Of a stretch of 64,000 bases of DNA, positions 2,536-37,600 are shown in pieces (the first letter of the stretch is position 1; the number at the start of each line of letters is the position of its first letter). The DNA comes from Heterodontus francisci. Lineage: Eukaryota. Under the pieces are notes generated by a model. It was not told the DNA's origin and searched no databases. It was given only the letters and a program-made list of their open reading frames with translations. The stretch is taken from the NCBI RefSeq assembly GCF_036365525.1, contig NC_090384.1, forward strand, positions 55,797,895 through 55,861,894. Direction: 5' to 3'. A program made the position numbers and the translations under genes.

Positions 2536-5500
2536 GGACTAGATTTTGCCAAGTGACGCAAAATCCCAACACCAGGGTCATTTCGGGGTTGCACAAATGG
2601 CAGGACTTCTGTGGGTATCTTGCGCAATGCGGCCAATTAATGACATGTCTGCAGGGGAGCCGACCAATATCGGTTGGGGGGGGTGGGAGTTTGTGTCGGC
2701 AGCGAGCTTGAGGACGGCATCTTTAAGGGATGGTCGGCAGCTTTCATGCTGGCTGCACATAGGGAAGGCTGAAGAGTGCAGCAGAAGGCTGTGTGGGGGG
2801 ATGGCAGGACTGCGAAGAAGGGTCACTCCACAGTTCAGTGGCACCTCCGGCAGGTAGTGAGGGCAAGGAAGGAAGTACTATTTCCAGAGGATGGGATGAG
2901 GAGGCCAGCCTGACTAATGAAGAAGGCCTGGGATGAAGGTGGCCAAAGAGATGAGCAGCCGTGCGGTCATGGTGCAAGGTGGCAGTGCTGCATGTATAAT
3001 ATGCTGGCCATGACATAAGCAGTGATGCAGATGACCCATGCACTGGGACTCAACAAGGACCAAGATAGAGGGTAATGTCACAACAGAGCACCATGACCAA
3101 TCATTAATGCTCAATGCAGTACCAAACATGGGTGAATGCATGCAGTAGTCCTCCCAGTGCTCCATGTAGATGCTGAGCCTCTGGAATCATCAGCTAAATG
3201 GGTGCTTGTAGAGCAGGAGTGGGAAATTAGTAGCCATCTGTCAGAGTTCCCAGAGGCTGTTCACTCCCATGTGTGCATGATGGAGGAGTCCACCAATGCT
3301 ATGTGTGGCAGCACGACTCTGGTTTATGAGCGCATGGACAACTGCATTGAGTGAGTGGTGATCCACACGCAGCAGGCCACCGAGTGGATGCAGGAGGCAC
3401 ATACCAGCCTCCCAGTGTGGCATCAACTTTGAGTGGTATTGAGCACTGGATTGGAAAGATGGCTCAGAGACACATGAATCCAGGTAAGGAGAGTACGGAT
3501 GGCCCATGAAAGGGTCAAGGAAGGGATGGCTGATGGAAACGGCAGCTCTGCTGAAGGCGACCCCAGCTTTGACGGCAGACCCTTGGCCCCCCTGACAGTG
3601 ACTGCTTCCAACCCTGATTTCAGAGGCTGCCCCACCCAGAAGCATGTGACCCAACCCATGCTGGGCCCTCAAAGGCTTTGCCACGCAAAGGTCATCTGCC
3701 ATTGTAGGGCAAGGATGGATGATGCACTTGGGATGAAGTCCTCACAGGATCAGTGACATTGTCACGGCACGGCACTGCATGCCATCAGGGCATCCACAGA
3801 GAGGTGCCTGGCTCTGGTCCAGTGGAGGCATGGAGAGTCTCAGCTGAATCTAGTGTAGATAAGGGAATCATGGATTTCTGTTGTGCGCATGTCAATGGCC
3901 CGGGCATCAACGCCTCCTGTACATAGCCATTGGTTCTAACTCAGCTTACCCCTCAGCCTCCTCATTGGAGGAGGCAGCATGCTCAAGAGAATCATTCAGT
4001 GCCAGTTCAACTCCTCTGTTGCGCCAGCTTGTGCACAGCGCAACACACCATCGGAAACTCTTGAGGGGCTTTACTGGAGGTCTTCCTAGAATGGTCTAAA
4101 CATTTAAAACGCACCTTAAGAAGGCCAATTGCCTGTTCAGTAGTCACCCTTACAAGTTAGATGGCTCTGATTGCATGTTTCTTCTGCCTTGGTGTTGGGA
4201 TTCTGCACTGGTGTGAGCAGCCCTGTCTTTAGTAGATAATCTGCATTACCCAGGACCCAACCACAAAGGCTTGCCAGTGGAACGAACAATTGGGGCACCT
4301 GGCAATGTCTCAGAATGAAAGAGTCATGGCAGGTTTTCAGGAACTGAGAGCACACTTGCAGGATCCTTTTGCAGTGATATCACATACAATTTGCACATTG
4401 AAGGAATGGAACCCCTTCTTGTTGACAAAAGCACTTGGCTGCTCTTGAGAAGCCTTGATGGCCACATGCGTGTAGTCTATTACCTCCTGGACCTGAGAGA
4501 ATCCTGCTATGGTGCCGGAGCCAATCATCCTCTCAGCCAAACGTGGATTATTGGTCAAGATCCTTATGTCGTTCCCTGCCCTCGCAAAAAAGACATCTGC
4601 CACCTGCTCAATGCAATGATGGGCCACAGATTGAGAAATCCTATAATTGTTCCCAGTCAATCCCTGGAATGACTCTGTAGTGAAACCATTCACCTTCACT
4701 GCCACAGGCAATGAGTGCCCACCACATCCCAGCGGCCTCAATTCCTCCTCCAGAATGCTGCATAGGTCAGCGACCACCTGTCTTGATAAATGCATTCTTC
4801 AAGATACTGGTGCTCCAATGGGTCCATCAAGCTGAGCTATTGTCCGTTGCTCCTGTGTACTGGGTAGTGCCTTCATTGAGCATCCGACTGCCTTCATGCC
4901 CCTGAGTACCCTCCACGCGTGCGTGCCAGTACAGCATCATATCACTGGTGCTCCTCCCCATGTGGCTGCCGAAGTTTCTCTCTTTCCTTCTGACTGCAGG
5001 AGGCGATCGCTGAGTGCAGGGCACCCATTTCCCTTTGCAGCCTTCAATGCTCAATGGATGTCATTCCCCCACATAGCCCTGCGCTGCCTCGGTTCACTGC
5101 ATGAGTCCTGGGAGAAAACCTTCCAATTGCTGACGTCCGCCGCAGTTTTTTCACACAGCAATCCCTTTAAATTGAACTCCCTTCAATGGCAGCCCTGAGC
5201 CTTCATACTTGGAAACTCTGCACAGCTGAATGCCTGTCAGTTTCAGCCAACAATCACTTCCTGCTATGCTCTTGTTTCATTTGAGCTGGCTTGCCACTGC
5301 AGCTCTGTGGCACCCGTGTGCCTTCTATAAAATTCAAATCACTGTGCAAAATTGCCATTAATGACTCCCTTAAATGGCTTCAATTGGATGCACTCCTTCA
5401 GCTAGCGGAATCCTTTTTCTGCTCCCATGCCACCCCTGGAAAGTTTTCCCAGAGGCAGGAAGACATCAGGTAGTCATGCCGATGCGGTTTCCCCACATTT

Positions 5501-15178: not shown

Positions 15179-15438
15179 CTTTTAATTAAAGCTTTAATAA
15201 ATATGACAGCAACCACATGCTTAGGTAGCCAGGCTGGTTACAGGTCCAACTTCTTCCAGTCCGAAAAAGACAGAAGTAATTTTGTCTTAATTATTGGGAA
15301 CTGCCTGTAAGGTTCAAATGTCAAAAAAAAATGTAAAAAAATACTGAGTGCTGAAAAATCAGTCTTAAAATTGTCCGCAGTGCTGAAAGCAAATTTGCAC
15401 GCATAGGAATTATTGGAAGTTAATGTTTTTCAATATAT

Positions 15439-16091
15439 AGGCTGGAAATTTGCCACAATGGCATTTGGCCTTGGGGCCAAATGCGCGGGGGCCGAACCTG
15501 CTTTGGTGGGTGGCAGAACCCAGAGAGGCATTCTGCTCCCACGAATGGCCAGCCTAATCAGAGGGCTGGCAGCTCAGCACCGCCACTGCTAGTGCTGGCC
15601 ATTGCTGAGGCTGCAGCTGCTCAATGGCCAAGGCGCCCTCGAATTTGGGTAAGTATCCTTGGGGGACTCCGGAGCCAAGCAGGTAGAACCCAGCAATTGG
15701 TGGGGGAGGGAGGGTGCGGTTGTGAGGAACAGGTGGCACCATTACTGCTGGGGCAGCTCCTCTGTGGACCATGGAATGCCCAAAAAGGAGGCCTCCCCCC
15801 ACCCCCCAACCCCGGAGCCCACTGGATGGTCTCCCCATGTGGTGGCAAGCCCTGCAACCACCCACCCCCAGACATAGGCAAAATGCCCACAAAGGTGGCA
15901 AGTGACCCTTAATTGGTCACTTAAGTGGCTCAGTTGTGCTCCGGATGGGCGGCTCGTTTATCACCTTTCCTGTTGCTGGCAAAATGGCATGGCGGCACCC
16001 CCCCCCCCCACCCCTTGGAGTCCTTATGGCATCATTTTGCCAGCCTTCCTGCCTCCCAGCTTGTCGCCAGAGGGCTGGTAAAATTCAGCCC
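15439..16091. mobile_element. Harbinger-type MITE
   Basis: Ends GGCTGGAAATTT / AAAATTCAGCCC. Confidence 0.6.
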
Positions 16092-16289
16092 ACATTTTTA
16101 GTCCCATTTATCTTCCAAATAATCATACCACTTCAATATTTGAAAATATCACCTTTACAAATTAAGCGACGTGCGAATTCTAACATAAGCCTTTATAATA
16201 AGATTCACTTATGGATCCTGAAACAACCTACATTTACAGTAGCTTTTTAATTCGATGTATTGTGATCAAGTGAAAAGCTGAACTTACCA

Positions 16290-16606
16290 TCAAAACTGAA
16301 GCAGGAAACTGCGTTCTGTAGGTGATATGTTTGAACTTATTCGAGTAACTTTAATCCTATATTCCATTTGATCATCATCAGCACTTGCAGTGAAAGTTAA
16401 CTCTGTGAACTTGAAATATGTGTTCTCGATGGATTCTTCTATAGTCACTCCAAGTTTGTCATTTGTCTCTAATATTGCTTCACCTCGGTACCATTCTACA
16501 TTAATATCTTTTGGAAAATATGCACATATATTAGAGCATAAAGTCACCTCCTCTCCTTCTGTAGGGGCTGAACAGCAAACGATATTTGGTACAATAGGAG
16601 GGGTTC
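16290..16606 (-). CDS. NCR3LG1-like: Exon 8: post-TM C1-like Ig domain 4, ending in TGA
   Basis: Acceptor aatttcag|[44 protein letters not shown]...[13 protein letters not shown]...FLLQF*. TGA at 16292-16290, then a GTAAGT donor starting at 16287. Confidence 0.85.
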
Positions 16607-19600
16607 CTGAAATTAAGTGGGAAAGACAAGTTTAGCCATGCAAAAAATTAATTTGTGTACTAGCTTTGCACACATTTATTTTTAAAGTACTTTTATACCT
16701 AACATTCACTCACCATTGCTTTCACTTTGTAATTCTTACAATTACCCACAAATTGTTTTTTTTTTCACTGTAATCAGATTATTAACCCTTAGATTAACAG
16801 GAGCTCCAGGAATTTCAGGCTCCCCAGGGCCAACAACCACTGTTATGAACAAGTCCTTAGCTCACATATTCATATTGCAGTAATAAAGCAATCACATTGG
16901 ACTGTGGCTACTTTAAGAAAATAATTTTTTCTGCTTCTGTAGCCACTGTCTATTGTGGAAGAGAGTTCCATGGGACGGGCCACCCTCCAATAATTCAACT
17001 AAGTGGCTATTCTACACAAGTGCACAAAGACAAAATGCAGCAATCTATTCAACAGAGGAGGGCATCACGTTCAAGCCTGGTCATGTCCTGACCCAATGTC
17101 TACATATGTACATTTGTGAGCCGAGTCACTGGATAGTGACTAGGAGCAGTAGCTCTCACTGATTTTCCCTTCTGTAATCCAGGTGCACTGAGGCAGATTG
17201 AAGTGCCCAGTTGCTGAACCTAGCACAGATCACAGATTGAACTTGGGCCTTCTGGTCTCTATGCCTTAGCATTATCTAGAACAGCGCCTTTATCAACTGG
17301 GCCATCAAAGGAAAAGTCAGGAAGTAGCTTTAATGTTGCGAGAATAACACTATACTACAAAATATTACGGCACAAAATTGGATGTGTAGCACCCATTTTT
17401 TGGGCACTATAGTGCCCTTACAGATCCAATGTGGTATCCACAGTGAACGCACACACCTCTGCTGTGAGCCGCACCAGACGCCATATTGATGAGAACATTA
17501 GCACGTTTGCAGTGAGACCACTGGAAGTATGCAGAGTAAGCAGATACTAACGTCAATCAGCGTGCAATACAGATTTGACACGAACGTTGCCATTTTGGCA
17601 CTCAATGCTCCAGCTAACACCCTCTTTTAACCTCAAACAGTTGAACATGTGTCCAGCAGCAGGAAGAACGGCACCCCCACCATCCCCCCACCCCGCCCAA
17701 CAATGACAATTTAAAGGTATAATCAACTACTTTCACATTAGTTACTGATTCATTGCAACAGATTCTTGCTACAATTGTGCAAATCTATGGTGCTTTCTAG
17801 TGTTCTTTAAAATTACTAAAGTCTACAGAAGTGGTGTGGCAGAAGGCATTCTGCTTGGAATACAGCATGACTGGCAGAATAAGCAGAGGCCAGACAGAGC
17901 AGTGCAAGCTGCTAGCAAAGTAGAAGGAGGGGGAGAAGGAGGCCATATCCGGCCAGTGTGTTCAGGCAGCAAATCTCCTACCTGAACCTGAGCAAAAAAC
18001 AATATAAGACATCTGTAGTTCACTGAAGACATTCTCACTGTAATGCATCACCTGCTGCAGCCACATCTACAACCTCAGAGGAGGCCAAGGGCCACGTTGC
18101 CAGTGGCTGCGAATTTGACTGTGGCCATGAACCTTTAGGGGTCTAACTCCTTCCAGGCTAGAGCAGGAGATATTTGCAACATCGCATAGTTTGCTGTCCA
18201 CTTTTGCATAAGGGAGGTCACTGACGCTCTCTATTCAAAGACAGCTGATTACATTCCATTCTCTCCTGTCAATAAGCAGCACGCAGAGCAAGCGCACAGC
18301 TTGACAAGGATTGCAGGCTTCCTCATGGAGAAGGACTAGACCATCTGCATGCAGATCACTTTGCCGCAAGTTAACTCACATGTTCCGCAACCGAAAGGGA
18401 TTCCACTCCCTGCACGTCCAGTTGGTGTGTGACCATCAACAGCGAATCATGCAGTTCAATGCCCAGTATCCTGGCATCCATCATGATACCTTGATTCTGC
18501 AGCAGTCCACTGTGCCATTTGTGCAACCACAACAAACTAAAGAGTAGCTACTGAATGACAGGCCTATCTGTTGACAACATAGTTAGTGACTCCGGTGCAC
18601 AACTCAAGCATACAAAGGCAGCCTGCATATAATGAATGCCATGCTGTCACATAACATGTGGTGGAGCAGATCATTGGCATGCTGAAATAAAGCATCTGCT
18701 TCCTGGACCACACGAGAGGGGTCCCGCAGTACTCAGCAGAGCAGGTGTCAAGATTCATGGTTGTCTGTTGTATGTTCACAACCTTGCCGTCATGACAGCA
18801 CTGCCCTTGCCACCAGCTATTCAAAGAACAAAGAACAAAGCAGGGGAGGGGGAAGAGGGCGACCTAGATGGACCCTTTCTGGACAGGCTGCCCATGAACA
18901 ACACATCTGACTGGTACCTTTAGATTAGATTAGAGATACAGCACTGAAACAGGCCCTTCGGCCCACCGAGTCTGTGCCGACCATCAACCACCCATTTATA
19001 CTAATCCTACACTAATCCCATATTCCTACCAAACATCCCCACCTGCCCCTGTATTTCCCTACCACCTACCTATACTAGTGACAATTTATAATGGCCAATT
19101 TACCTATCAACCTGCAAGTATTTTGGCTGTGGGAGGAAACCGGAGCACCCGGAGAAAACCCACGCAGACACAGGGAGAACTTGCAAACTCCACACAGGCA
19201 GTACCCAGAATCGAACCCGGGTCCCTGGAGCTGTGAGGCTGCGGTGCTAACCACTGCGCCACTGTGTCGCCCTTCCAATAGAAGCAACCCTAATTCCCCC
19301 ATTCAATAACGATCCCACACCTTCCCTTCTCTCTGTTGTTGGCTATTACTGTGTCTGCTTGGCCACAATGCAAAAATAAAGCTCAACACAAAATAAACAT
19401 TCCAAACCAAGTTTAAAAATTAAAACATGCTATATTGCATAGAAACATAAATAATCACCCTTGTACATTCCCTTGGTGCCTGTTTTGCATGTGTCTTTGC
19501 CTGTCCTAGTGCTCCTTCATAATGTTACCCCATTGGCTGCAGAATGGCTGATGAAAGGCTGCTGACAGCCTTGCAGGAGGACCTCAAGCACCTCTGAGAG

Positions 19601-22600
19601 TGGAAGATCTAGCTTCAGACTGCACCATCTCAACATGCATGGCAGCAGCCTTGGGGGGCTGGCTGATAGGCAACAGCCAGGATGGTATGGCAGCAGACGG
19701 AGCACAAATGCTGTCATTTTGAGAGAGATCAACAGGCTTATGCTCCTCGGTGCCACTCCCATTACCCCGGGGTGGCAATTCTGCAATTCCAGTAAAATCT
19801 GTTGGAGGGCAGATTGCTGGACTGCTGTGTTATCCTGCAAGCTCTTTACAATGCTGGGATCCATAACCATGATGGCAACAGGCTCACCTTGCATGACAGA
19901 CGTTTAAGCTTCCACTGTAGCACCCAGACATTGGGCGGCTTCTGCTTTTGCTGCAATGGAAGCTGTGTCATTGGCCACCAGACATTGCACAATGACTGGG
20001 TGTCAATGGAGGTGGCCACCACTTCCAAGTTGGGAAGGATGGGCTCCAGGTTCTGTGCCATGTGCAAAATTGGTGCTGGACTCCTCCATGCTCCTTGACA
20101 CCCTACCCAAGCTTTCTGGTAGGCTTGCCAATGTACCAATCATTTCATTGTGCATATCCATCAGCCTTCTTTTGTAGCCTGCTCCATTTCAATGCTCATC
20201 TGAGTTCTCTGTAGCAGAACTCATACGCGACCTCGCCTCTGCGGAGCCAGCATCTGCGTTACCCTTGCCCTAGTCTTACCATTCATGCCAGGTGTCTCAC
20301 CACATTCAGATCTCTCAGCTACCTTCTAAGCATGCACAATGTCAGTATCTGAGCTGGAGGCTGTGAGTGTAAGATCAAGTGAGGGTGTTCATCATCACTG
20401 CTGTTGCACCACTGCCTGGCCAGGCGGCAGTTCTCGGACATTTATAAAGACAAAGGCACAAGGATACGCTTCTGATGAAGGGTCGTCAACTTGAAACGTT
20501 AGCTCTGTTTCTCTCTCTTTAGATGTTGCCTAACCTGCTAAGTATTTCCAGCATTTTCTGTTTTTATTTCAGATTTCCAGCATCCATAGTATTTTGCTTT
20601 TGCACAAGGATATGTTTGTGGTGAAGGGCTGGGATGGACGGTAGGGGCATAAAGAGTAAGGGATGCATACTTACACTATCTGCAGCTTCAAAATTAGAAA
20701 AGGCTGTGGGATGAGAGGGGTGTGAGGAGGAGGAGGATTAGGTATTATGATACTACCATCTTCTATTATTTCAGCCCTGCTGCTGTCTACGGTCTCATCA
20801 ATGGATATTCCAATAATGGCCAGCACCATCTCCTCCATGATGATGAGTACATGCAGGCTTGCCTATCCCCTATGGGTAGCATCTGCTGTCTCTGGTTTTG
20901 TGCCACCTTCTCCTGCAAGAGAGAGGGATGTGTGTCAGTGTGTCTGATGCAATCCATAGCTGTCATGGTTAAATAACTGGCAACATGTGCAAGCTCTGTG
21001 AGATATGGGTGTGAGACTTGCAGCAGTAGTAAGTGTGTGAGGGTGAGGTGAAGTTATGACTGTTAGGATGTTAGGTATGAGTCCCAGTTGGTACAGATTG
21101 TTGTAAGTGAATTGAGTAGGGTCTGTGCTTAGGAGTGCAGTGGTGGAAATGGTACTTGAAGAAGCACTCAAAGATCTTAACCACTTCTGTGAGGTCATTG
21201 AACTCTTTGCAGCACTGCATCCAGGCCTTTGTGGATTGACTCCCATGGCTATCTGGTCCCACAGCCTTCTGAGAGTTAGTCTGGAGGGCCTCCTGACCCC
21301 TTACTGATAGAGCACATCACTCCTCCTCTGCATCTCCTCAACCAAGGCCCCCAGAGCAGCATCTGAAAATCTTGGAAACCACTCTCTCCCATGTTGTGCT
21401 ATCCTTTTATCGTTCCCAGGTCAGAATCAGTTATAGAATGATTACCAGCATCTACACCAACCGCAATGCTTCTCCCCTTTAAGAGGTGCAAGTTAGCTTT
21501 AAGTAGTGCAGGCTAGTTTAACTGGTGCTAGTGTCTCACGATTTTGCCCCACTCCGCACTCTCCACCGTGCTGAAGCATACAGCCACTCAACGGCATGGA
21601 AATTTTCCATTAAGAAATTGTTCAACATGGCCTGTTCAATTGCCCCTTCCCACCCCCACTCATGCGGCCAACTCCATTTGCCTTTTTTTCCTGTGCACCT
21701 CTGTATCTGCTATATACACATTATACCCTGCTTTCATTTCACTCATTAGTATTTCATCTTCAAGGAGGTGAAGGAAATTAGTGCTGGAGTACTTCCATGT
21801 GGAGATTTGTAGGGTTATAATGCACAGCCAAGTTCCTAATAATGTGTCCAAAACCCAAACTCAAAATAGCACCTGGTACTCACCAGTGTGATATTATTCT
21901 ATGTTCACCACCCCCTCCACAAACCACCCCCACCCCCACCATTATCCTGTGCCCTTTCTGATTGCCAATCTAGTACCAGTGAAGAATTATGAATAGTCCC
22001 TACACTTTGGGCTTATGGTCATGAGGAACTGAGTTTGGACTACCACTTATTGTATATAAAAGGCAGCCATGAGCAACAAAGGATACTTTCAACTTATCTG
22101 TCAAGGTTGCATTTGTACCCAAGGTAAAAGTTTAATATATATTCCACTACATCATTCTATTAAATGCCTATTGTTATCATCAAGAAATATCAAAAGATGT
22201 TGCGACTGATTTTTACGACCTCGTCCCTCAGGAAAGAACCATTACCCTGGCAAAATGTTGGGAAAAAAGGGGCAGAGATCCATTACACTTGATCTCTTCT
22301 CCTTTTATGTTGCCCTCGCGATTCCAGGCCTAATACTGGGATGGGAAGAGGTGAGGTGGAGATTGGCCTATAGCTAAGTTCACATGTAAATGAGGCCAGA
22401 GAGAGAGTGTTCCTGCTCCACTGACTATTTTCTGCTATGACATCCATGAGGCACTCAGCTGCAAAGGTACCGAAGAAGCTTATGGTGAGCTTGCACTGAA
22501 ATTCTGATGGAGGTCCTGCAGCACACCACTGGATTCCTCAAGGTAAGGAAACTACTAGTGACCCACCAGATCTTCAAACCTTCGAGGCTTCCAACTGCTG

Positions 22601-25600
22601 CTTCCCACTAAGAGCCAGAGGCCCAAAGGCTGCTAACCAGACTTGAGTTAATCCCCACATTTGTCCTCCCAGGAATAGGCTTGTTCCATAGGTGCAACTT
22701 CGAAACTTAAATAGCCCAGAACACCAAATCATCTGTACAGCAGTCTTAACAGGCATAGCACACTTCAGGTACACGGCTCCTATCCAACATTGGAGCAGAG
22801 GGGGTTAATAAAATCGATCCCGTCATCTCTTCCAACCCAACACCATGCTTCCCTTACACATATTCAAATTGCAAAATCAGGACCAATGAATATTATGAAT
22901 AGATCCAACTGTATCTCAGATATCTAAGATAGAGCAAACAACTGAAAATTACCCCTTACCTTTTAGATCAAGTAGAAAATTTCGCTCAGTAGGCTTCATG
23001 GCTATCTGTGGATAAGCAACTTTTATCCTATATATGACTTGATCATCATCAGGGATTGGAATCAAGGTTAGCTTTGCTATCTTGAACAGTCCTTGCTCAC
23101 TGACCAATTCTTCCATGCTTATTCCATATTTATCACTATTTTTGATTATTTTCTCCCCTCTGAACCACTGAACTTCTATCTCTTTTGGAAAGAACATACT
23201 TATGGTACTGTGGAGAGTTGATTTCTGGTTTGGTTGAGGGTTAGAGGTGAAAGCAATTTCTGATACTAAAGGATGGAGCACTGAAATAAAAGAATGAGAA
23301 ACAGTGATGGAGTGAGAAACTACACAAGGAATATTGAAGGCACTTTTAATTAGTCATAATTTTAAACCATCAATATTGTCAAAAAATACAGGAAATATTA
23401 TATTCACTCTCATGGCTGATTCAAACATCTCTCAATATCCAAGAAATTAACTGCAGAAATTCACTGTTATAGTTCTCCAACTATATGTAAAGATTTAATT
23501 ATTATAGTGTAGTGACCACCTGAAAACTTTCTCTTACCTTGAAGGTTAAACTGGAACATCCGTTCAATTGGTGTTGAGGATAGTCTTCTATGAATAACTT
23601 GTATTCTGTATTCAATCTGATCATCATCAGTGGCTGGAGTGAATGTTAATTTCGCTGTAATGCTTAGGCCATCATTGGAAATGGACTCTTCCCTGATCAC
23701 TTTATCTCCTTTGGACTGTTCTATTGTTTCCTTACCTCTATACCATTCAAACTCAATCTCCTTTGGAAAGTATGTATGCACACAACAGGACAAAGTTACT
23801 CTACTTCCTGGTTTAGGATCAGGACTGCAGGTGATTTCTGATACAGAAGGTGGTAATACATGTACTGCAAAACACAAATGAATAATCACGTAATCAAGGT
23901 GATACACTGCCCAGAGGTTTTCTCACTATATTTTGAAATAAATATATACCTCATGTTCAATACAATCACCAGTAATAGTCTACTTTTTCAAGATGTTAAA
24001 TTAAAACCACTAAATGGAAGGAAAACAATGTCTAAATGCCTTTCCAGTTTTCAAACGCAATCCATGCTGGTGGTATAAAATTTTGCATCATTTTCGAGGT
24101 TTTCTTTGGTTTCATTCTGACTTTTTCTCCAGTATATTTTGGTCATTTGCAGACTTCATCATTCCTATATTTTTCTCTCCTGCACCAAGGCTTTACCCTC
24201 ACCTTTACCTTCTTTCTCTTTATTGCTTGAATGTGAAATTGCAATCAAACAAAACCATATATTGTTCTTAAAAGGTACTTCGACATATAAAGGATCATGT
24301 GAACCCAGAAATTACTATTCCCAATATTAACTGATCAATGCTTAATGCATTTGGATGGCATTCTTCTGACTGCTATTTTAATCTAAGTATTAACCTGTCT
24401 ATTTTAAATAAATTAATATCTTTGACAATATAGCAGGCAAGGGAACATTATATAAATATAACAGTACACCTATTAACAATCACCAATCATAATTTTTGGG
24501 CTTTACTTCTTAATGACACACTAATGTGATTTTATAAAAGTTCATGTTAACTGTTAACCCACGAAAGAAGCTCTAGTAAAAGGTCAGCACAATATGATTT
24601 ATTTTACAAATTTGTGCCAATGCCATACATGAGGAACAAACCAAATGTACAGAAAAGGCCAAACAAATGGTAGCAACACAAGAAAAATCTTAAAGCACAA
24701 CTTTGGGAATAATTAAAATATCTTGTTCTTTCAAAAGTGTAGGTTAATATAATACCAATCATTTTCTACTTAATTAAGATAATTCACAATACATATCCTT
24801 CTTTCAGTCTTTACTTTCTGCCTGATATGTGAAAAATAGAATATTTCAAACATTAATGTTATCAGTTTGAAAATGCACAAATACTAGATGTAACCACAGC
24901 CAGTTTCTCACCCATTACTCTGACTCAATATTTTTCCAAACAAAAATGCACATGCAACATTAACTCACACCCAGTACATTCTTTGTACTCGAGAATATTA
25001 TGAATGGGCCCTGAAACTCATTTTATAGCAAGGTCTTTATCTTGCAATCTACTAGCTGCAACATATATGCTTAAATATGCTACATTTTGGACAATTTCAC
25101 TCATTGTTTTTAGAATTTTACTTAATATAAATTGTTGTCAGAATATTCAACATAATCACAATATAAATTAATCTCATACTACCGAAAACAGTTCATAAAA
25201 ATTACCACTAATAAATACTTCTCACACTGTGCATACAAATTTCCTGAAGCCAAAGTTTCTTAGCCACAAGATCCACTCATGATTCCTATTATGACTTCAA
25301 AAGTCTAAATACTCTACTGTAATGGAACCAAAGGAAAATGTCACCTTTACCCTGCAGCATTAGCTTCAAACTGCGTTTAACAGGTATTGTCGATACCCGC
25401 GGATGAGTAACTTTGATGCTGTATTCCACCTGGTTGTCATCCAAGACAGGAATGAAAGTTGCTTTTGCAGTTATATTGGACAATCCACCTTCAGAAAATC
25501 CCTCTTCCATCACCATTCCAAAGTTAACTCCATTTATGATTTTCACTTTGCCTCTGTACCACTCAGTCTCAACCTCTTCTGCAAACAATGTATTTATGGT

Positions 25601-28600
25601 ACATAGCAATGTGACTTCTTTTCCTGGCTCAGCATCGTGACTACAGGTAAGTTCCGATACTTTGAGGGGTGGCACTGAAGCATAAAAAGCAATGGGGGGA
25701 AATATAAATGGAGACCTTCATGATGAAATAAGCATAAATTAAGCATATTAGTTTTAGAAATAAGCATATCACTTTCATTTCTAACAATGTAAGCTCTCCA
25801 TAGAAACATACTGAAGCTGACAACATGTTTCCAAGTTGTAACATATTGAAGGTGCTAATTTGGCATGTTCTAAACTCCACTAATGTGCTATCCAAACGCT
25901 CTTTGTTGACTAAAATGCAGTTTCCTGAATTCTTCCACTCAACATCTGGTATTAAAGAGATCAGATCTCACACTGCCATGCCAATTTTTCTTTTCTACTG
26001 TAAAATGTCAGTCGTACAGCAAACAACTTTCAACAAGTGGGTATGCATCAGGTTACAGGCAGAAGCAATGTCTTTCAGGATTGAAACACCAAGTCAGGGT
26101 TATAATAGGCTTAAATGATACCCAATGTTAGTGAGCAATTGGCGAATTTTATTGCCATCACACAACTGTGGTAACAAAATATGGAAACTATACAAATACA
26201 TCTGTTTCAAAGATATTAGCAGAAGCCTAGAAACTCCTTGTGTAATTGTATCCGCTAGTGTGAAAGTGTACATATAGCAGAATATGCAATATTTGTATAC
26301 GTTCATTTTAACATTTTCTGTCTGCTATCGTAACAAAGGAATCACTCTAATTCAATTAAACAACAATAATTTTATTAAAAGAGATGATAGTCAAGTGAAT
26401 TGATTAATGAAATCAAATACTAAGATCACCAGTGGATTTCACCCTGCAATGTATTTACTGTGTGTGATTGTAGAGTAATAAATGTATTTACTGTACACCA
26501 CTGTACAGCACAAATGTATTTACGGAAGGCGGGCTGGTAAATTGCACACAGTGCAAATGTATTGTACTGAAGCAACGAAAAGTAACAAACCCACTGAAAA
26601 ATGTAAGCATAGTATATGAATTTCAGAAATCAAGAGGTTACAGTCTTAACAGTTCTACTTATAAAGATAAATGACCTTACCTTTTTGATGATTTTTGAAG
26701 TAATAATATCCAGCAGCAAGAAATGCAGCAATTACCACTACAACTAAAACGCCAACAATTGCTCCAACTGAGGTAGTGCTCTTGGACTCTGCAATTAAAA
26801 ACACATGTAGAGCAGATAATATGTGCCAAAGCACCTAACCTGCATGTATTAATAGGAAGCGGAAAGAACCCCCTATTAGAATATTTTCTAGCAAATGGCT
26901 ATTGGTGGCTCTTAATTACTCTGTTTAAGATAAGGATTCTAAGCTGCCTCCATGCTTTTTTTTTTAGCAATACGGAGAACTTTTTCATTTTCCCTCAACC
27001 CTCCTGAAGTTAGAAAATGAGGTACACACACTGTGTAAATGTCTTTACTGATGTATGAGTCAGGTGAGTCACATGCATGATGTAAATATACTGATACCAC
27101 GGTATGTAGAATTGGACAGATATTAATCATTTTTGTGCACAAATAAAATATACACATGCAACATTAACTCACACCCAGTATATTAGAATATTATGAATGG
27201 GCCCTGAAGTGCATTTTATAGCAAGGACTTTATCTTGTAATCTACTAGTTGCAACAAATATGCTTATATATGCTACATTTTGCACAATTTCACTCATTGG
27301 GCTGGATTTTATAGAGGCCTCGACGACAGGATCCATGGCGGGGGGAGGGGGGGGCACATGAAGATTGCCCCGGATGAGGCTCGCCACAGACCTCGACACC
27401 GGCAGGGCCCATTCTGATATTGGCAGTGGTGACCATCCCCTGCCGCTCAGCGATGGGACTGTGATTTAAATATTCAAATTCATTAACTTGCCCGAGTTAA
27501 TTACATTCCTGTCGCCTCTTGAAGTGCCGCCGCGATCTTTATCCCAGTGGCTGGCACTGCCGCACCTTCAAATCCCTGTCTGGGGAAACGAGGCGCAACA
27601 CCTGTGGGGAGGGGGAGGAAGTAAGTTTCTCAGTGTGGGAGGCGGGGAGCGGGGTCAAACTATTCTGATTGGTGGACGGAATGGTGGGGAGGGGTAAATT
27701 TAAAAGTTTATGAACTTTGTGGGGGGTGGGGGGGGGGGAGGTCAGTTATGCAGGGTAAATTTTTTTGAGGGGAGAGGGCAAGGAATGAGTGTATGAATGG
27801 GGATGGGTGGGAGAGGGGCTGAAAACATGTATGTAATTTTTTTTAAATCAGTTTTATTGAACTTTCCTTTCAAACATGTAAATTAAATGCAAGGGCTGGG
27901 AGCCCTTTAAAATGGCGCCGGTGCTTGCGCAGTGGTGCCAGATGCCGTTGCCAGGCACGGCTTACCCACCCCGTCTACGCCATCGGGAGTGGGGAGACGG
28001 TCCACCCCAGCCATGTAAATGAGCCGCTGCGTATAATATCGCAGTGGCTACGCGGAGTAAAACCCACGTGTGCGGGCCAACATCTTTTACGGCCGCCACC
28101 ATAATTGGTGGCAGCAACATAAAATTCAGCCCATTGTTTTTAGAACTTTAAAGCAGTAAACATCTTTACTCCTTAGGTCTTCAATTCCTTGTACAATCCA
28201 CAGGCTACTGTCAGCCACGGCTCAGTGGTAGCATACTCACCTCTGAGTCAGAAGGCTGTGAGTTTAAGCCCTACTCCAGAGACTAGGCTGACATTGCTAT
28301 CTTGTACTTAAGGAGTACTGCACTACCAGAGGAGTCGTCTTTCAGATGAAGTGTTAAGCTGAGGCCCTGTCTGCTCACTCAAATGGACATAAAATATCCC
28401 ACGGCACTATTTGAAGAGGGGAAGGTGTCCTGGGCAACATTTATACATCAACCATCATTTATACCTAAAACTTTGTCATTTATTTCTTTACTGTTTTTGG
28501 GAGCTTGCTATGTGCAAATTGGGGATCTTATTTCCTGTATTACAACAGTCGTTACACTTCAAAAGTATTTCATTGGTGCTGAAGTGCTTTTGAATGTCCT

Positions 28601-31600
28601 GAGGTTGTGACTTTCTTCCAAGTTTGGCGTCACCTAACTTCTATTTATCAACTTACCTACACCAGTGGTTGTCAACCTCTTTGACTGAAATATCCCTTTC
28701 AAATGTAATCACAGACCCCCATCTAATGTAGGATACTAACTAATACTCAGATTATGAAAGTGTTGCATGTAAGGAGTGTTTTATAATGCTTTAAGGAAGG
28801 AAGGTATTTACTTATAGTTATCAGTAAGATATGTCATCACATCAGAGTGTGCCTGCTTCTCACTGCAGAGTCTGTTTATGCTTGGTGGGTTTTTTGACAA
28901 TGATGCTCATAAATCATTCTCCACTTCCAGAATGGACCTGTACTTTGCCTTCACAGCCTGAGGGAAATAGTGGCCTGGGCTAACTTATATTTTGACGCTC
29001 CTTCTCTAAATATGTAGTACTTAATTTTTTTTTTTTTAAACTCCCCTCTCTGGGACAAGGCTGAACTCACCTGGCGCCCATCATCAACCTTGATAATTGT
29101 GATCTTCATGCCATGCATAGCTCTCCTCTATGCATGTTCCCCTCCTAGGTGAGAGAGCCGGTCCATTCTGTGCTGTGTATGTGGCGGCCACACTCCGCTC
29201 CCACTTCTGAGCTTACACCAAGCCCACCTCCTGACACCGTTCATTCACTTACACTTGACCACAGCACCCTTGGCAGTCAGCCCTCAGAGCCCACCAGTAA
29301 GGTTGGCCCTACTCAGTAAGTACTTTATTTCACAGGCCCCCTGAAAAGTTTCTATGGACCTCATTTTGAATACCAGTTGACCTACAATATGGACATTGGA
29401 CCTTGATGTAGATTTCTCAAGATTAAAAATCTTGCCTCTTGATTTGCAAATATGTGCTCAGAATTGTTAATTGCACGCAAAACAGCATTGGTGTTTAAAA
29501 TAGGACACAAGCCATTTGCTTACAGATAATTTCAAATGTCAGAAGTCAGCAAGTTCTGTCCAACCTAAGAATCTAGTTATTATCAGAATATGAGTACAAT
29601 AATAAGAATTAGGCTTAAAAGTTTTAATCCAAAGTTTTGGGGAAAAAGCAATACTTTTCTGCTGCTAACCCAGATAAACCCACTTGTCCCATGTGTACTG
29701 TCAAGATGATATTATATGCGCTGGTTCATTTAAAAGACTGGGGTACACCGCACCCCCCCCCCACACCCTGGTGGAGGGGGCGGGTGGTCCGTTCCTAGCA
29801 ATGGTGTCAGCTGCCTTTGCGCAGGCGCCGACGCCATTTTCAAAGGGCTTTGAGCCCTACAATGCAATTTAAATATTTAAAGGAATCCTGATCCTTACCT
29901 TCTCCCACACCCCCGCCAATAAGCATAGAAGTAATTAGCTGTGCTCTCCCCAAAAACAAAACAACTACCTAGTGCTCCCGACCTTCCCCCCCAAAGTTCA
30001 TCAACATTACACTTTTGCCCTTCCCACCACCCCCTAGACCAATGAAATGACTCTGACGCCGCTTCCCCTCCACCCCCTCACTGACAAACTTACCTGCTTC
30101 CTCCTCCCCACCAGTGTTCCACCTCAGATCCGAAGGTGTGGAAGTGCTGGCCACCAGCACCAATATCGCTTTGGGACAGACGGTGGGAGCGGGTAAGTAA
30201 TCAATTTGTTTATTTAAATAAATTCAAATATTTAAATCAATTTGAATATTTAATTGGGGCTCCTGTTGCCAAGCGCCGAGAGGGTGCCGCCACGAGGCTT
30301 TGCCGCTGGCAATATTGGGTCGTGCCTTCCCAGCTGGAGGCATGTTCCGGCCCCTCCTGCCACGACCCCCAACATCAGAGGGGCTGTAAAATTCAGCCCA
30401 TACAGTCCAAGACAAGCCGAGGTTTCATCCCCAGTTTATACTGATTTATCTGATGACAGCTGTACTGTCAATTAGCTTCAGCCGGGTAAATAGAAAAAGA
30501 AAAAAAATCGATCAGCCATGAATCCTTCTTCTCACCATGCAGCCATCGATACTAGGAACTGCTTGCTTGTGGAATCAGATGAAGATAGGATCCATACTGG
30601 GATTGCCTGTCAGCACTCAATGGATAGGTACAAAGATGAAGAATGGGCACTTGGTGAAGTATAGGAGAGCAGTGGTAACCACATGACCTTGTTCTAGTAA
30701 GGATTAACCACCCCTCAGTCCAGGAAGGGAGTAAGTACTTTACCATCGTCGAAGTAACTTGTTTTAATTGCACTGTCTACAGTAGAATTCCAAAGAGTGT
30801 CAAATGATTGCTTATATCTCCTAATCTTAGTACTTGAAAAACTTTATTCCTCATAAAAGAAGACATACCTGTGACAATGAGTTGAGCTTCGAGTATAGTG
30901 GCATTAGGATATGACTGGTGCTTCACAATGCATCTGTAAATATTACCATCATCTTCTGATGTTGCTGCAATATATATTTGACTGGATTTATTAAATGTCC
31001 CATCATCATTGCTATCCAATTCACCTCCACCATCCTTGCTCGTAACACTTTCCGTTTTCCCATGCGATCGCTTTTCCCAGCGTATATCTAGCTGCTGCGG
31101 ATAGAATCCAGTAACGTCACATCTCACAGACCCCTTTGAGCCATTTGGGATCGTAATACGTTCATTGGACAAGCTGATCTTTGGTTGAGCTGCATACAAG
31201 ACAAAACTAAATTGAAGATTGACTCATTATAGCTGGATATTATTCATTGTTAATTGAGCAGATGTAAAATATGGATGCTTGCTATCAACATCCTGGGGGT
31301 CACCATTGACCAGAAACTGAACTGGAGTAGCCATATAAATACTGTGGCTACAAGAGCAGGTCAGAGGCTGGGAATTCTGCGGCAAGTAACTCACCTCCTG
31401 ACTCCCCAGTGCCTGTCCACCATCTACAAAGCACAAATCAGGAGTGTGATGGAATACTTTCCACTTGCCTAGATGGGTGCAGCTCCAACAACATTCAAGA
31501 GGCTCACCACCATCCAGGACAAAGCAGCCCATTTGATTGGCACCCCATTCACCACCTTCAACATTCACTCCCTTCATCACATAAGCACAGTGACAGCAGT

Positions 31601-34600: not shown

Positions 34601-37600
34601 ATTTAAAATCTAGCCCCATGATTTTACACCAGGTTATATCCAGAGTTACTCCACTAAATACAGTCCCAAACAATAACAGGGAATGTGCCAGCCTTGGCTC
34701 AGTGGTAACATTCTCACTTCTGAGTCAGAAGGTTTTTGAGTTAAGCTCCAGTCCAGAGACTTAAGCACATAATCAGTGCAGAAGTGAAGGAGTGCAGCAT
34801 TGTTGGAGTTGTCACATGGCACACTATGAAGAAGAACAAGGGAATTCTCCCAGTGTCCTGTTTAATATTTGTCCCTCAGTTACCACATTGCTGTTGGTGG
34901 GACCTTGCTGCATGGAGATTGGCTCCTGCATTTCCCTACATTACAATACTGACTACATTTCAAAAGTTCTTAATTGACTGTGAAGCACCTGGGGCATCCT
35001 GAGGCATTGAAAGGCCAATATAATTGTACTTGTGTCTGCTATAATCAATTTCAGTAACCAAGTTTATACTTTATACAAATATACTTTAAGATAGGTTTCA
35101 ACAATACAAATTTTATTTATAAAACGTTACCTAACACTTGAACCACTGAGCTCTTTTCTGCTTTTGCTGGTGTATAAAATACAGTACAGGTATATTGCCC
35201 TTCTTCATTGATTTGTATTTTTGGAAGATATAGTGAAGCATTTCCTTTCCGCAAATCATCTTCATTCATTCTTGCGCCTGGTCTATTTGAGGAATGATTC
35301 CCTTCATTGAACACATACACCTTTCTCCTGCTTTTTTCATGTATAAAGAACCACTGGATAGCTACATAGTGCAGGTCAAGCTCAGCAGTGTTAAAGTCAG
35401 ATACTTTACATCTCAGAAGAACATCTTCATTCACTAGAACTTGCAGTGGACTTTGAAATATTTCCATAAGCAATGTATCTATACGGAAAAAAAAGTTTGA
35501 AATATATGATAAAACATCTTGTATCATGATTACAAACAGAAGAATTATCACCTCAGATTAAAATATATCACACGTTTGCATTCTTTTAATTAATTATTAC
35601 ACAAAGAAAACCAAGAAATTTGAAACAAATTTGATTTCTAAAGTAAAGTACAATTTAATGTGACATTAAGGACATTGTTAGACTATAGATACCCAATACC
35701 AAAGCCGAAGAGGGCTGCCAGAGCTGAGTTACAATACTGACCCTACATCCCTCTGTGATGGGACTTCAGAGTTCTCTATATGTCGACTTGTACACATCTG
35801 TACAGTTTCACCTACCAGCATCCAAATGCAATTTAATTTTAATACTAGGACAGATCAAAAGTATTATGGCTAATGTAACCAGAGAGCTGCCAAAGACTGT
35901 CAACTTTCGGCAAAGTCAGCATACCAAACATCCTGAGACAACTAATATTGAATCAGGATCAGGGACCCACCAAAATTAACATAAGCAAAATCACAGTAAC
36001 AAAGAAAATAATGGCACTAAAGAGTGACAAATTCCCAGGACCAGATGGGTTCCATCCCAAGGTTTAAAAGAAGTAGGTGGGAACATTGCAGATGTTCTAA
36101 CTATAATCTTCTAAAGTTCTCTTGATTCAGGAATCATTCCTTTTGATAGGAAAATTGTGCATGTCACTTCGCTATTTAAGAAAGATGAGAGAGGGAAACC
36201 AGGGAATTCCAGACCAGTTGGCCCAAAATCTGTGTTGGGAAATTACTAGAATCTATATTTAAGGATAGGGAAACTGAATACCTTAAAAAGTTTTGACATG
36301 GTTAGGAAATTGGCTGAGCAGTAGGAGGCAGACAGTAGAAATAATGGATAGGTGCTCTAATTGGCAGAATTTGACTAGCAGTGTCCCACAAGGAACTGTG
36401 TTGGGCCACAACTGTTCACCATATTTATTAATGAATTAGATGATGGAATAGAAAGCCATATATCCAAATTTGATGATGTTTCAAAGTTGGTGGCATTGTA
36501 AGCAGTGCAGCTGGAATCGTAACATAAGAGATATCGATAGGTTAAGTGAATGGACAAAACTAAAGCAAATTGATGTCAATGTAGGCAAATGTAAGGTTAT
36601 CTACTTCGGACCTGAAAACAATAGAACAGTGTACTTTCTAAATGGTGAAAAGCTGGAAATAGTGGAGGCCCAAAGAGATTTGGGGGTCCAAGTACATAGA
36701 TCATTAAAATGTCATAAACAAGTACAGAAATAATCAAAAAGGCTAACACATTGCTGACCTTTATATCTAAAGGATTAGAATATAAACAGGCTTCAGTGAT
36801 ACAAAGCCCTGGTCAGACCGCACATGGTGTATTGTGAGCAATTCTGGCCTTGGAGGGAGTGCAGCATAGATTTACCAGAATGATACCTGAACTCCAAAGG
36901 TTAAATTATGAAGGCAGATTACACAAATTAGGTTTGTATTCCCTGGAATTAAGAAGGTTAAGGGGTCAAAGTTTTCAAAATAGCAAGGCGAGCAGATAGG
37001 GTAGATAGCGAGAAACCACTTCTGCTGTTTGGGGAGTCTAGGTGTAGGGGGGATTAGTCTAAAAGTAGGAGCCAGACCTTTCAGGGGTGAGATTAGGAAA
37101 CACTTCTACTTGCAAAGGGTGGTAGAAGTTTGGAACTCTCTTCTGAAAATGACATTTGATGCTAGATCAATTGTTAATTTTAAAACTGAGATTGGTAGAT
37201 TTTTGTTAACCGAAGGTATTAAGGGATATGAGAAAAAGGCAGGTATATGGAGTTAGGTCACAAATCAGACATGATCTCATTGAATGGTGGAATAGGCTCA
37301 AGGAGCTAAATGGCCTACTCCTATTCCTCGGTTGATTTCGCTTGTAGACTTGTGGCAAAGGCATTTCACAGTATAAACCTAAACCATATATATTAAAAGG
37401 TTACAGGTTCAATTCTTTATTTGTGCTGATCCAGCCCACCTCAACTGGGACAGTCTTTGAGGCACTACAGTTTGCTTCAGTCGGAAGTAAAAAGTGAAAC
37501 CATGGTTTACACTCATGATCTCTACCTAGTGGTCATTGTAGATATGTGGATATTGAAGGAGAGCAGGATTGTGTTCAGCAGTGATCCTTCCACCATCCCT

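What the first reader, a model, noticed from the sequence alone, without database searches (positions are those of the whole stretch)
16290..26788. B7-H6-like receptor with four tandem cytoplasmic Ig-C1 domains that have lost the canonical disulfide
Seen in sequence: a clean TM exon (26681-26788) is followed in frame by four ~107-aa exons sharing C1-set motifs (VTLxC, Y/FFPKEI..W(Y/F)RG, DDxQxxYxIxV). All four have Ile where the extracellular C1 has the F-strand Cys (YRC versus YSI, YRI, YRI, YRI), and domain 3 has no Cys at all. N-glycosylation sequons number 5 in the ~220-aa ectodomain against 2 in ~430 aa after the TM. Established: C1-set domains are normally extracellular or lumenal in antigen receptors, MHC, tapasin and B7 proteins; human B7-H6 is the NKp30 ligand and has a Gag-related, non-Ig tail. 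Inference: these are C1 domains adapted to the reducing cytosol, forming an intracellular scaffold for reverse signalling, oligomerisation or sensing. I have an uncertain recollection that non-mammalian B7-H6 relatives with intracellular Ig domains have been mentioned, so novelty needs a literature check.
Basis: partly seen in the sequence, partly recalled or inferred. Interest (0 to 1): 0.9.

Follow-up and report, generated by a model that had tools for sequence, protein, structure and literature searches.

The report
B7-H6-like protein with intracellular Ig domains
A horn shark immune-ligand gene makes a membrane protein whose anchor is followed by four antibody-type (C1-set) Ig domains that should lie inside the cell; unnamed relatives from sharks to reptiles share this layout, and I found no published description of it.

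Summary
On the minus strand, a leader, V, C1 and TM exon are followed by four ~107-aa phase-1 exons with clean AG/GT sites. All four match Pfam C1-set. All four have Ile at the F-strand Cys position.

Spliced RNA contigs from two studies join ecto-C1 to TM to the first tail exon exactly at the predicted sites. The whole exon chain equals a RefSeq model, "obscurin-like isoform X2" of Heterodontus francisci (753 aa).

There is one TM helix, no second hydrophobic segment, a positive-inside charge pattern, and 5 sequons outside against 2 in the tail. The tail should therefore be cytosolic. AlphaFold gives Ig sandwiches closest to MHC class II alpha2 and beta2-microglobulin.

The layout is a family trait: 93 of 164 fetched relatives, from sharks to alligator (named NCR3LG1 there), have 1-2 Ig domains, a TM and 3-14 Ig domains.

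The "Cys lost to suit the cytosol" reading is only partly right. All four domains descend from one ancient tail-domain type that had already lost that Cys, and half of the family's tail domains keep both Cys.

Tail function is untested. I found no paper describing this, but two key papers were not readable.

The scan has already flagged and followed up the same architecture in paralogues on this chromosome (s1-871830, s1-872180, s1-872333).

The parts
54592..54670 (-). Leader exon, coding part. ATG at 54670-54668, 26 codons plus 1 base, hydrophobic signal peptide, GT donor at 54591.
   Evidence: Sequence read. Matches P0161 residues 40-65. The sawshark orthologue P0160 starts at the equivalent Met.
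35131..35478 (-). V-set Ig exon, phase 1-1.
   Evidence: Splice sites read. Pfam V-set E 2.5e-9. Best single-domain PDB match is B7-H6 at 46 bits. 100% identical to P0161.
30869..31189 (-). Ectodomain C1-set Ig exon with the canonical Cys pair (YRC).
   Evidence: Acceptor read. Joint 30869|26788 in four spliced contigs. Pfam C1-set E 5.8e-11. PDB B7-H6 E 1.6e-11.
26681..26788 (-). Transmembrane exon. It holds the only strongly hydrophobic segment after the signal peptide and is followed by KNHQK.
   Evidence: Sequence. Kyte-Doolittle 19-residue mean 3.0. Predicted as a single helix, residues 302-322. Both flanking joints seen in RNA contigs.
25351..25674 (-). Tail domain A (C1-set-like; B-strand Cys kept, F-strand Ile). 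A possible second donor lies 6 nt downstream at 25345. This exon is skipped in isoform P0162.
   Evidence: Joint 26681|25674 in four contigs, and the X1 contig runs on to 25345. P0162 lacks this exon.
23538..23864 (-). Tail domain B (C1-set-like; F-strand Ile).
   Evidence: Pfam C1-set E 1.3e-8. AlphaFold pLDDT 84 with seven strands. Foldseek top hits are MHC II alpha2 and beta2-microglobulin.
22960..23280 (-). Tail domain C (C1-set-like; no Cys at all).
   Evidence: Orthologous domain present in three shark species.
16290..16606 (-). Tail domain D and stop codon (TGA 16292-16290). The protein ends at the end of the domain.
   Evidence: 100% identical to the C-terminus of P0161.
15186..16289 (-). 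3' untranslated region with ATTAAA signals 39 nt and about 1,100 nt after the stop.
   Evidence: The signal positions fit the contig lengths (about 93 and about 1,116 nt beyond the stop). This is arithmetic, not a direct alignment.

Best explanation
This is a real, transcribed horn shark (Heterodontus francisci) gene for a type I membrane protein of an old B7-H6-like family: signal peptide, V domain, C1 domain, one TM helix, then four C1-set Ig domains and a stop.

Shown here:
- The exon chain and its splicing from the ectodomain C1 through the TM exon into the first tail domain.
- Identity with a RefSeq model.
- C1-set sequence and predicted fold for each tail domain.
- Domain-by-domain orthologues in two other shark orders.
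- The same layout in relatives from sharks to alligator.

Inferred from standard membrane-insertion rules: the V-C1 part is outside and glycosylated, and the four tail domains stay in the cytosol and fold without the usual disulfide.

Inferred origin: every exon is phase 1-1, so C1 exons placed behind the TM exon stay in frame. The four domains are tandem copies of one ancestral tail-domain type that had lost the F-strand Cys before cartilaginous and bony vertebrates split.

Inferred function (speculative): the ectodomain is a ligand for an NKp30-type receptor. The cytosolic Ig rod, starting about 8 residues from the membrane, is a docking scaffold that presents four copies of one surface to cytosolic partners. 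This would couple the ligand to signalling or clustering, much as the B30.2 domain does for butyrophilins.
For: Splicing:
- Four contigs (2,188-4,099 nt; 2 samples, 2 studies) carry the joints 30869|26788 and 26681|25674 with GT..AG ends.
- Their lengths fit inclusion of B, C and D plus 3'UTRs ending at ATTAAA signals.

Gene model:
- P0161 is 100% identical over V, C1, TM, A, B, C and D.

C1-set nature:
- Pfam C1-set for all four.
- PDB profile hits are Ig constant domains.
- AlphaFold pLDDT 84 for domain B and 79.7 for the whole protein, with four tail sandwiches and one helix.
- Foldseek top hits are MHC II alpha2, beta2-microglobulin and HLA-DM/DO.

Topology:
- One TM at 296-314, and the tail's maximum hydropathy is 1.0.
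- Net charge is +2.8 after the TM against -0.27 before it, with the after-side higher in 41 of 45 family proteins, and no tail segment reaches 1.8.
- Sequons are 5 against 2 here, 8 against 1 and 6 against 1 in the orthologues, and 1.19 against 0.57 per 100 aa across the family.

Conservation:
- Tail domains are 66-84% identical between shark orders, like V and C1 (76-88%) and above the TM (47-68%).

Family:
- 93 of 164 fetched proteins have 1-2 Ig domains, a TM and 3 or more Ig domains.
- Species and source names are, including alligator and frog proteins named NCR3LG1.

Origin:
- Domain tree.

B7-H6 likeness:
-.
Against: - No experiment places the tail in the cytosol; the topology is inferred.
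They rest on the RefSeq model and on contig lengths.
- Half of the family's tail domains keep both canonical Cys, which is unexpected for a purely cytosolic life.
- A caecilian predicted isoform lacks the TM (P0156), so soluble forms may exist.
- The tail-dimer prediction gave no answer.
- Support for nesting A-D inside the d5-type clade is 89-91% SH-aLRT on 104 columns, which is not decisive.
- NKp30 binding and any cytosolic partner are untested.
- The runs are only guessed to be RNA by their records. The spliced contigs are the evidence that they are.
Confidence: 0.7

Rival explanations
1. The four domains act outside the cell. The main product skips the in-frame TM exon, giving a secreted V-C1-C1x4 protein, and the TM-containing form is minor.
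For: All exons are phase 1-1, so skipping the TM exon keeps the frame. A caecilian relative has a predicted isoform without the TM (P0156, 916 aa against 953). Exon skipping does occur in this gene: P0162 lacks exon A.
Against: All four long contigs contain the TM exon, and no C1-to-A joint is among the listed joints. Tail sequon density is at background and the canonical Cys pair is incomplete in every tail domain, unlike secreted C1 domains.
Confidence: 0.08
2. The tail is evolutionary debris: recently exonised C1 duplicates that are translated but have no function.
For: No function has been shown. Domain number varies: five in sawshark, four here, three in isoform X3.
Against: A, B, C and D each have one-to-one orthologues in Heterodontus, Heptranchias and Pristiophorus (99% support). 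Reading frames are intact, and identity is 66-84%, above that of the TM segment. Tail arrays are conserved position by position between sharks and tetrapods.
Confidence: 0.05
3. It is not a B7-H6 orthologue and does not bind NKp30. It belongs to a separate B7 branch (for example CD276-like) with another receptor.
For: The best whole-chain PDB hit of the V exon is 4Ig CD276 (E 1.4e-12). NCBI calls the sawshark orthologue 'CD276 antigen-like' and this gene 'obscurin-like'. Many paralogues exist, so one-to-one orthology with the human gene is unlikely.
Against: The CD276 score sums two V domains. Per domain, B7-H6 gives 46 bits against 30.5 for 2Ig CD276. The C1 exon hits B7-H6 at E 1.6e-11 with no CD276 among the best 60. 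Its C1 groups with the ectodomain C1 of proteins NCBI names NCR3LG1 (99%).
Confidence: 0.3
4. Unconventional topology: the tail is returned to the lumen or cell surface, as in IGSF1, where an internal hydrophobic linker and cleavage reorient Ig loops.
For: Half of the family's tail domains keep both canonical Cys, which would make sense in an oxidising compartment.
Against: This protein has no second hydrophobic segment (tail maximum hydropathy 1.0), and neither do the 45 relatives tested (maximum 1.74). The positive-inside pattern holds. Sequon density in the tail is half that of the ectodomain.
Confidence: 0.03

Closest known systems
Human B7-H6 (NCR3LG1), ligand of NKp30
   Same: Type I protein with V, C1 and TM. 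The V and C1 exons match solved B7-H6 chains at E 2.5e-11 and 1.6e-11. NCBI names alligator and frog family members NCR3LG1.
   Different: The human protein is 454 aa, with an intracytoplasmic domain homologous to GAG polyprotein that carries ITIM, SH2-binding and SH3-binding motifs (PMC2715080). The shark tail is four C1-set Ig domains with no such motifs noted. Orthology and NKp30 binding are untested.
Butyrophilins (e.g. BTN3A1): B7-like V-C ectodomain with an intracellular B30.2 domain
   Same: A B7-type ectodomain coupled through one TM to a folded intracellular domain. This is a model for inside-out or reverse signalling (PMC8968916 abstract).
   Different: The intracellular module is B30.2 (PRY-SPRY), not Ig. 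No ligand for the shark tail is known.
Integrin beta4 (own knowledge, not checked here)
   Same: A membrane protein that uses domains usually found outside the cell (fibronectin type III) as a cytoplasmic scaffold.
   Different: Different fold class and different family; it links to the keratin cytoskeleton.
Cytosolic Ig arrays of titin, obscurin and myotilin (I-set)
   Same: Tandem Ig sandwiches that fold in the reducing cytosol without disulfides. NCBI's automatic name for this gene is 'obscurin-like'.
   Different: Those are I-set domains in soluble muscle proteins. Here Pfam C1-set outscores I-set for all four domains, Foldseek's nearest folds are MHC and beta2-microglobulin C1 domains, and the array is membrane-anchored.
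UrIg2 of sharks (V plus nine C1 domains, then TM)
   Same: A shark non-rearranging V-C1 protein with tandem, recently duplicated C1 exons (PMC12227049). The ectodomain C1 here matches the solved UrIg2 chain at E 3.6e-12.
   Different: In UrIg2 all C1 domains precede the TM and are extracellular. Here four follow it.
IGSF1 (PMC6552037 abstract: type 1 TM protein; linker and cleavage details from own knowledge)
   Same: A multi-Ig membrane protein with a hydrophobic segment in the middle of the Ig array.
   Different: IGSF1 needs further hydrophobic segments and cleavage to keep its Ig loops lumenal. This protein has a single hydrophobic segment.

Membership tests
Ig C1-set domain (tail domains A-D) | Match to the Pfam C1-set model at or above the gathering score (21 bits), and better than the other Ig sets. 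| tested here: met
   B 35.5, D 27.3 and C 22.6 bits, all above the cut-off. A scores 20.1 bits, just below. C1-set is the best Ig family for all four.
Ig C1-set domain (tail domains A-D) | Seven-strand sandwich without C'/C'' strands, structurally closest to known C1 domains. | tested here: met
   seven strands, pLDDT 84.3; the top Foldseek hits are MHC II alpha2, beta2-microglobulin and HLA-DM/DO, with TM-score 0.62-0.78. This is a prediction, not a solved structure.
Ig C1-set domain (tail domains A-D) | Canonical B-strand to F-strand disulfide. | tested here: not met
   the F-strand position is Ile in all four. The B-strand Cys is present in A and B, absent in C, and shifted by one residue in D.
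Ig C1-set domain (tail domains A-D) | Core motifs: C-strand Trp, the FYP-type motif before it, and the D-x-x-x-Y tyrosine corner before the F strand. | tested here: met
   W, F, D-D-x-Q and Y are invariant in the four domains. The YxIxV(T/I)H motif replaces YxCxVxH.
B7-H6 (NCR3LG1) family | Signal peptide, V domain, C1-type domain and single TM, with the ectodomain closest to B7-H6 among B7 proteins. | tested here: met
   Per-domain PDB scores favour B7-H6 (V 46 bits, C1 48 bits). Only solved structures were compared, not all B7 families.
B7-H6 (NCR3LG1) family | Phylogenetic grouping with recognised B7-H6 orthologues. | tested here: inconclusive
   the ectodomain C1 groups (99%) with the ectodomain C1 of an alligator protein that NCBI names NCR3LG1. 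That name is automatic, and no mammalian B7-H6 or outgroup B7 was in the tree.
B7-H6 (NCR3LG1) family | Binds NKp30. | not testable with these tools
   This needs a binding assay with shark NKp30.
B7-H6 (NCR3LG1) family | Conserved synteny with NCR3LG1. | not tested
   The window holds only this gene and LINE fragments. Earlier scan notes report paralogues nearby.
Unnamed V-C1-TM-(C1)n family (this report) | One or two Ig domains, one TM helix, then three or more C1-like Ig domains with no further hydrophobic segment. | tested here: met
   P0161 reads as two Ig domains, a TM, then four Ig domains. 93 of the 164 fetched proteins share the pattern.

The most novel reading that the evidence does not exclude
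Cytosolic C1-set Ig arrays are an ancient intracellular module of B7-H6-type NK ligands. They bind cytosolic partners and so control display or signalling of the ligand from inside the cell, as B30.2 does for butyrophilins. They date from the common ancestor of jawed vertebrates. No mammal or bird appeared among the 30 relatives whose species I looked up, and the human protein has a Gag-like tail instead.
Probability: 0.2. Interest if true: 0.9.

Novelty: new variant of a known kind. Interest (0 to 1): 0.74.

Why it matters
To my knowledge, C1-set domains are known only from the extracellular or lumenal parts of molecules linked to adaptive immunity (Ig, TCR, MHC, beta2-microglobulin, tapasin, SIRP, B7-H6). 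A membrane protein that places arrays of them in the cytosol, with each position conserved between sharks and tetrapods, would be a new use of this fold.

It would also give the B7-H6 family an ancestral intracellular part that the human protein lacks. That makes two questions testable: what an NK-cell ligand does on its own cell's side of the membrane, and how C1 domains fold and pair without disulfides.

For genome annotation, names such as 'obscurin-like', 'CD276 antigen-like' and 'uncharacterized' hide one coherent family.

Tried and rejected
- **Tail homodimer.** Complex prediction on residues 325-753 of P0161, two copies, scored 0.00 in both runs. The verdict was 'no answer', and the tool says my alignment was not used. 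This is evidence neither for nor against pairing.
- **dN/dS.** Selection is argued only from protein identities.
- **Differences in the second study's contigs.** They are too few to use: exon A has 2 non-synonymous and 1 synonymous, the TM 1 synonymous, and the ectodomain C1 6 non-synonymous and 1 synonymous.
- **Literature.** Eight searches and reading of PMC12227049, PMC10751288, PMC11599192 and PMC6514059 found no mention of Ig domains in the cytoplasmic tail of B7-H6-like proteins. Flajnik et al. 2012 (PMC3709836) and Ohta & Flajnik 2015 (PMC4594805) are not held.
- **Extra or decayed copies.** I looked for them in the 6.3-kb C-D intron and elsewhere in the window and found none.
- **C-terminal PDZ motif.** I considered -LQF as a class II PDZ motif and rejected it. 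It aligns with the strand that ends each of domains A-C.
- **Joined model.** Exons were searched one by one by reference. Whole-protein work used P0161, returned.
- The window has no N.

Full report
**1. What is in the sequence**

The gene lies on the minus strand. ORF listing and direct reading of the splice sites give these exons:
- Leader exon, coding part 54670-54592
- V exon 35478-35131
- Ectodomain C1 exon 31189-30869
- TM exon 26788-26681
- Four further exons: A 25674-25351, B 23864-23538, C 23280-22960, D 16606-16290

Every exon from V to C starts after an AG and ends before a GT, and is phase 1-1. D ends with TGA at 16292-16290.

The four tail exons are 32-49% identical to each other. 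They share invariant W, F, D-D-x-Q, Y-x-I-x-V and other core positions.
- YRC in the ectodomain against YSI/YRI/YRI/YRI in the tail.
- No Cys in domain C.
- 5 sequons in 224 ectodomain residues against 2 in 429 tail residues.

A profile of the four domains finds only these four exons, plus weakly the ectodomain C1, in the six-frame translation of the window. There are no hidden or decayed copies. The window has no N.

**2. Is it one transcript?**

The look-up of sequencing runs returned seven runs from two studies holding 8-15% of the sampled words of 22949-31199. Exons make up about that share of the stretch.

I laid four of them on 25300-31250 (5,951 letters, within the operators' limit). 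Each run has one long contig (2,195, 2,188, 3,500 and 4,099 nt). Each aligns to 30869-31191, 26681-26788 and 25351-25674 and to nothing between. The joints 26788|30869 and 25674|26681 have GT..AG ends on the gene's strand.

The run records only guess 'RNA'. The intron-free contigs are themselves the evidence. No joint from C1 directly to A (TM skipping) is among those listed.

The contigs of the second study differ at 13 of about 755 aligned positions, so they come from a divergent allele or a close relative.

One contig runs 6 nt past the A donor to a second GT at 25345. This would add two codons in frame and is an inference.

They rest on two things:
- The database protein P0161 (NCBI: 'obscurin-like isoform X2 [Heterodontus francisci]', 753 aa) is 100% identical to V, C1, TM, A, B, C and D.
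- Arithmetic on contig lengths. After exon A the contigs continue 1,058, 1,929 and 2,081 nt. B, C and D together are 965 nt. The remainders of 93 and 1,116 nt end just after ATTAAA signals 39 and 1,092-1,104 nt past the stop.

**3. What the tail domains are**

- Pfam's best family for all four is C1-set: E 8e-4, 1e-8, 1e-4 and 5e-6. Three are above the gathering score and A is 0.9 bit below it. I-set and V-set score lower.
- A profile of the four against PDB sequences hits Ig heavy-chain constant domains first.
- AlphaFold2 on domain B, with the four paralogues as the alignment, gives pLDDT 84.3 and seven strands.
- Foldseek's top matches are MHC class II alpha2, beta2-microglobulin and HLA-DM/DO C1 domains, with TM-score 0.62-0.78.
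- The full-length model of P0161 (50-sequence alignment, pLDDT 79.7) shows V and C1 above 90, one helix at 302-322, and four further sandwiches at about 70-90.

**4. Topology**

P0161 has a signal-peptide-like segment (residues 43-61 of the RefSeq numbering) and one strongly hydrophobic segment (296-314, mean hydropathy 3.0). The highest value in the tail is 1.0.

The TM is followed by KNHQK, and domain A begins about 8 residues later.

Across 45 relatives, net charge in the 12 residues after the TM averages +2.8 against -0.27 before it. The after-side is higher in 41 of the 45. No tail has a segment reaching 1.8.

Sequons are enriched outside: 5 against 2 here, and 8 against 1 and 6 against 1 in the two orthologues. 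Across 93 relatives the density is 1.19 against 0.57 per 100 aa.

By the standard rules (cleaved signal, single stop-transfer helix, positive-inside) the tail is cytosolic. This is inference; no experiment exists.

**5. It is a family, not a one-off**

The profile search of 1.84 billion representatives gave 439 proteins at E<=1e-3 and 165 at E<=1e-10. Of the 164 proteins fetched, 93 read as 1-2 Ig domains, one TM, then 3-14 Ig domains.

Names and species, as the sources give them:
- Sharks: Heptranchias perlo, Pristiophorus japonicus, Scyliorhinus torazame
- Reedfish, lungfish and coelacanth
- A caecilian
- Many frogs, including Xenopus laevis
- Turtles and a lizard
- An eel
- Alligators

Almost all are 'uncharacterized'. 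The alligator proteins (964-965 aa) and two frog proteins are named 'natural cytotoxicity triggering receptor 3 ligand 1', which is B7-H6.

None of the 30 clusters I looked up was from a mammal or bird. That is a sample, not proof of absence.

Close orthologues are P0001 (Heptranchias, four tail domains) and P0160 (Pristiophorus, five, with A duplicated). Identities to the window's exons:

| Exon | Identity to the two orthologues |
|---|---|
| V | 79-88% |
| C1 | 76-82% |
| TM | 47-68% |
| A | 73-75% |
| B | 70-83% |
| C | 66-76% |
| D | 71-84% |

The tail is about as conserved as the ectodomain and more conserved than the TM.

**6. Origin of the four domains and the missing cysteine**

A maximum-likelihood tree of 62 family domains (104 columns, SH-aLRT support) shows the following:
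- A, B, C and D are each one-to-one orthologous in the three sharks (99%).
- All four nest, at 89-91%, with one particular tail-domain type of the long-form proteins: sawshark d5, caecilian d5, alligator d4, coelacanth d5 and lungfish d5. In all of these the F-strand position is already I, M or V.
- Other tail positions also form clades that hold both shark and tetrapod members.
- The ectodomain C1 groups (99%) with the ectodomain C1 of the long forms, including the alligator NCR3LG1-named protein.

The simplest reading is that a multi-domain cytoplasmic array existed before cartilaginous and bony vertebrates split. One of its domains had lost the F-strand Cys. This shark gene's tail was then built by tandem duplication of that domain.

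Phase 1-1 exons throughout make such duplications frame-neutral.

Across the family both canonical Cys are present in 108 of 125 ectodomain domains (86%) but in 281 of 565 tail domains (50%). 24% of tail domains have neither. The counts are not phylogenetically independent.

Disulfide loss is therefore more common behind the membrane, but it is neither universal nor, in this gene, fourfold independent.

**7. B7-H6 likeness**

For the V exon, the best whole-chain PDB hit is 4Ig CD276 (50.5 bits, summed over two V domains). Per domain, B7-H6 scores 46 bits against 30.5 for 2Ig CD276.

The ectodomain C1 exon hits B7-H6 at E 1.6e-11, behind only antibody constant domains and UrIg2.

Human B7-H6 has an intracytoplasmic domain homologous to GAG polyprotein, with ITIM, SH2-binding and SH3-binding motifs (PMC2715080). 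The tails therefore differ completely. Orthology, synteny and NKp30 binding are untested.

**8. How it most likely works**

- **Shown:** transcription, the splicing of C1 to TM to A, and the domain identities.
- **Inferred:** type I insertion; a glycosylated V-C1 outside acting as a ligand for an NKp30-type receptor; four disulfide-free C1 sandwiches in the cytosol forming a short rod next to the inner leaflet.
- **Speculative:** the rod is a docking scaffold.
  - The long forms keep each tail position distinct over hundreds of millions of years, which suggests position-specific partners.
  - This short form repeats one domain type four times, which suggests multivalent binding of one partner.
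  - The nearest functional analogy is the butyrophilin B30.2 domain.
- A test of tail self-association gave no answer.

**9. Novelty**

I found no description of Ig domains in the cytoplasmic tail of B7-H6-like proteins. The two most relevant papers could not be read, so prior mention cannot be excluded.

The gene models themselves are public but unnamed.

Within this scan the same architecture has already been noted, and once followed up, in paralogues 390-560 kb before this window on the same piece of the genome (s1-871830, s1-872180, s1-872333). I reached my reading before seeing those notes, and they agree with it.

**10. Limits**

Exons were searched by reference, and P0161 stood in for the whole protein.

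Noticed in passing
window 25345-25351 (minus strand): One RNA contig (run X1) continues 6 nt past the exon A donor to a second GT (gtaaag|gtgaca). This alternative donor would insert two codons in frame. The sister run X3 stops at 25351.
   Followed up: partly
window 30869-31189: Contigs of the second study (runs X4, X5) differ from the window in the ectodomain C1 exon by 6 non-synonymous and 1 synonymous changes among the 7 listed. Exon A has 2 non-synonymous and 1 synonymous. This may hint at fast evolution or polymorphism of the ectodomain, but the numbers are too small to test.
   Followed up: partly
window 41248-45436 (+) and 57521-59532 (-): LINE fragments. An endonuclease (Exo_endo_phos, E 4e-8) and reverse transcriptase (RVT_1, E 3e-24) lie inside the 19-kb first intron. 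Another RVT_1 ORF (E 6e-16) lies upstream of the leader exon.
   Followed up: partly
window 27290-28700 and 29680-30270: Intronic stretches are covered by many short, 90-95% similar RNA contigs with loose ends. These are transcribed interspersed repeats, not part of this gene's mRNA.
   Followed up: no
window 54671-54862 (minus strand): The RefSeq model P0161 starts 39 codons upstream of the conserved Met (MPPVAG...). The sawshark orthologue starts at the downstream Met, so the annotated N-terminal extension is probably 5'UTR read as ORF.
   Followed up: partly
P0156 (Microcaecilia unicolor isoform X3; not in the window): This predicted isoform of a family member lacks the TM segment (916 against 953 aa). 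It is a possible soluble form in which the 'tail' Ig domains would be secreted.
   Followed up: no
family proteins P0003, P0004, P0027, P0028, P0039, P0045 (frogs; not in the window): Their tails alternate domains that keep both Cys with domains that have Leu/Val at both positions (pattern LV CC LV CC...). This suggests two-domain repeat units expanded in anurans.
   Followed up: no
window 4337-4795 (-): ORF with a weak DDE_Tnp_4 (Harbinger-type transposase) match, E 4e-4, below Pfam's cut-off.
   Followed up: no
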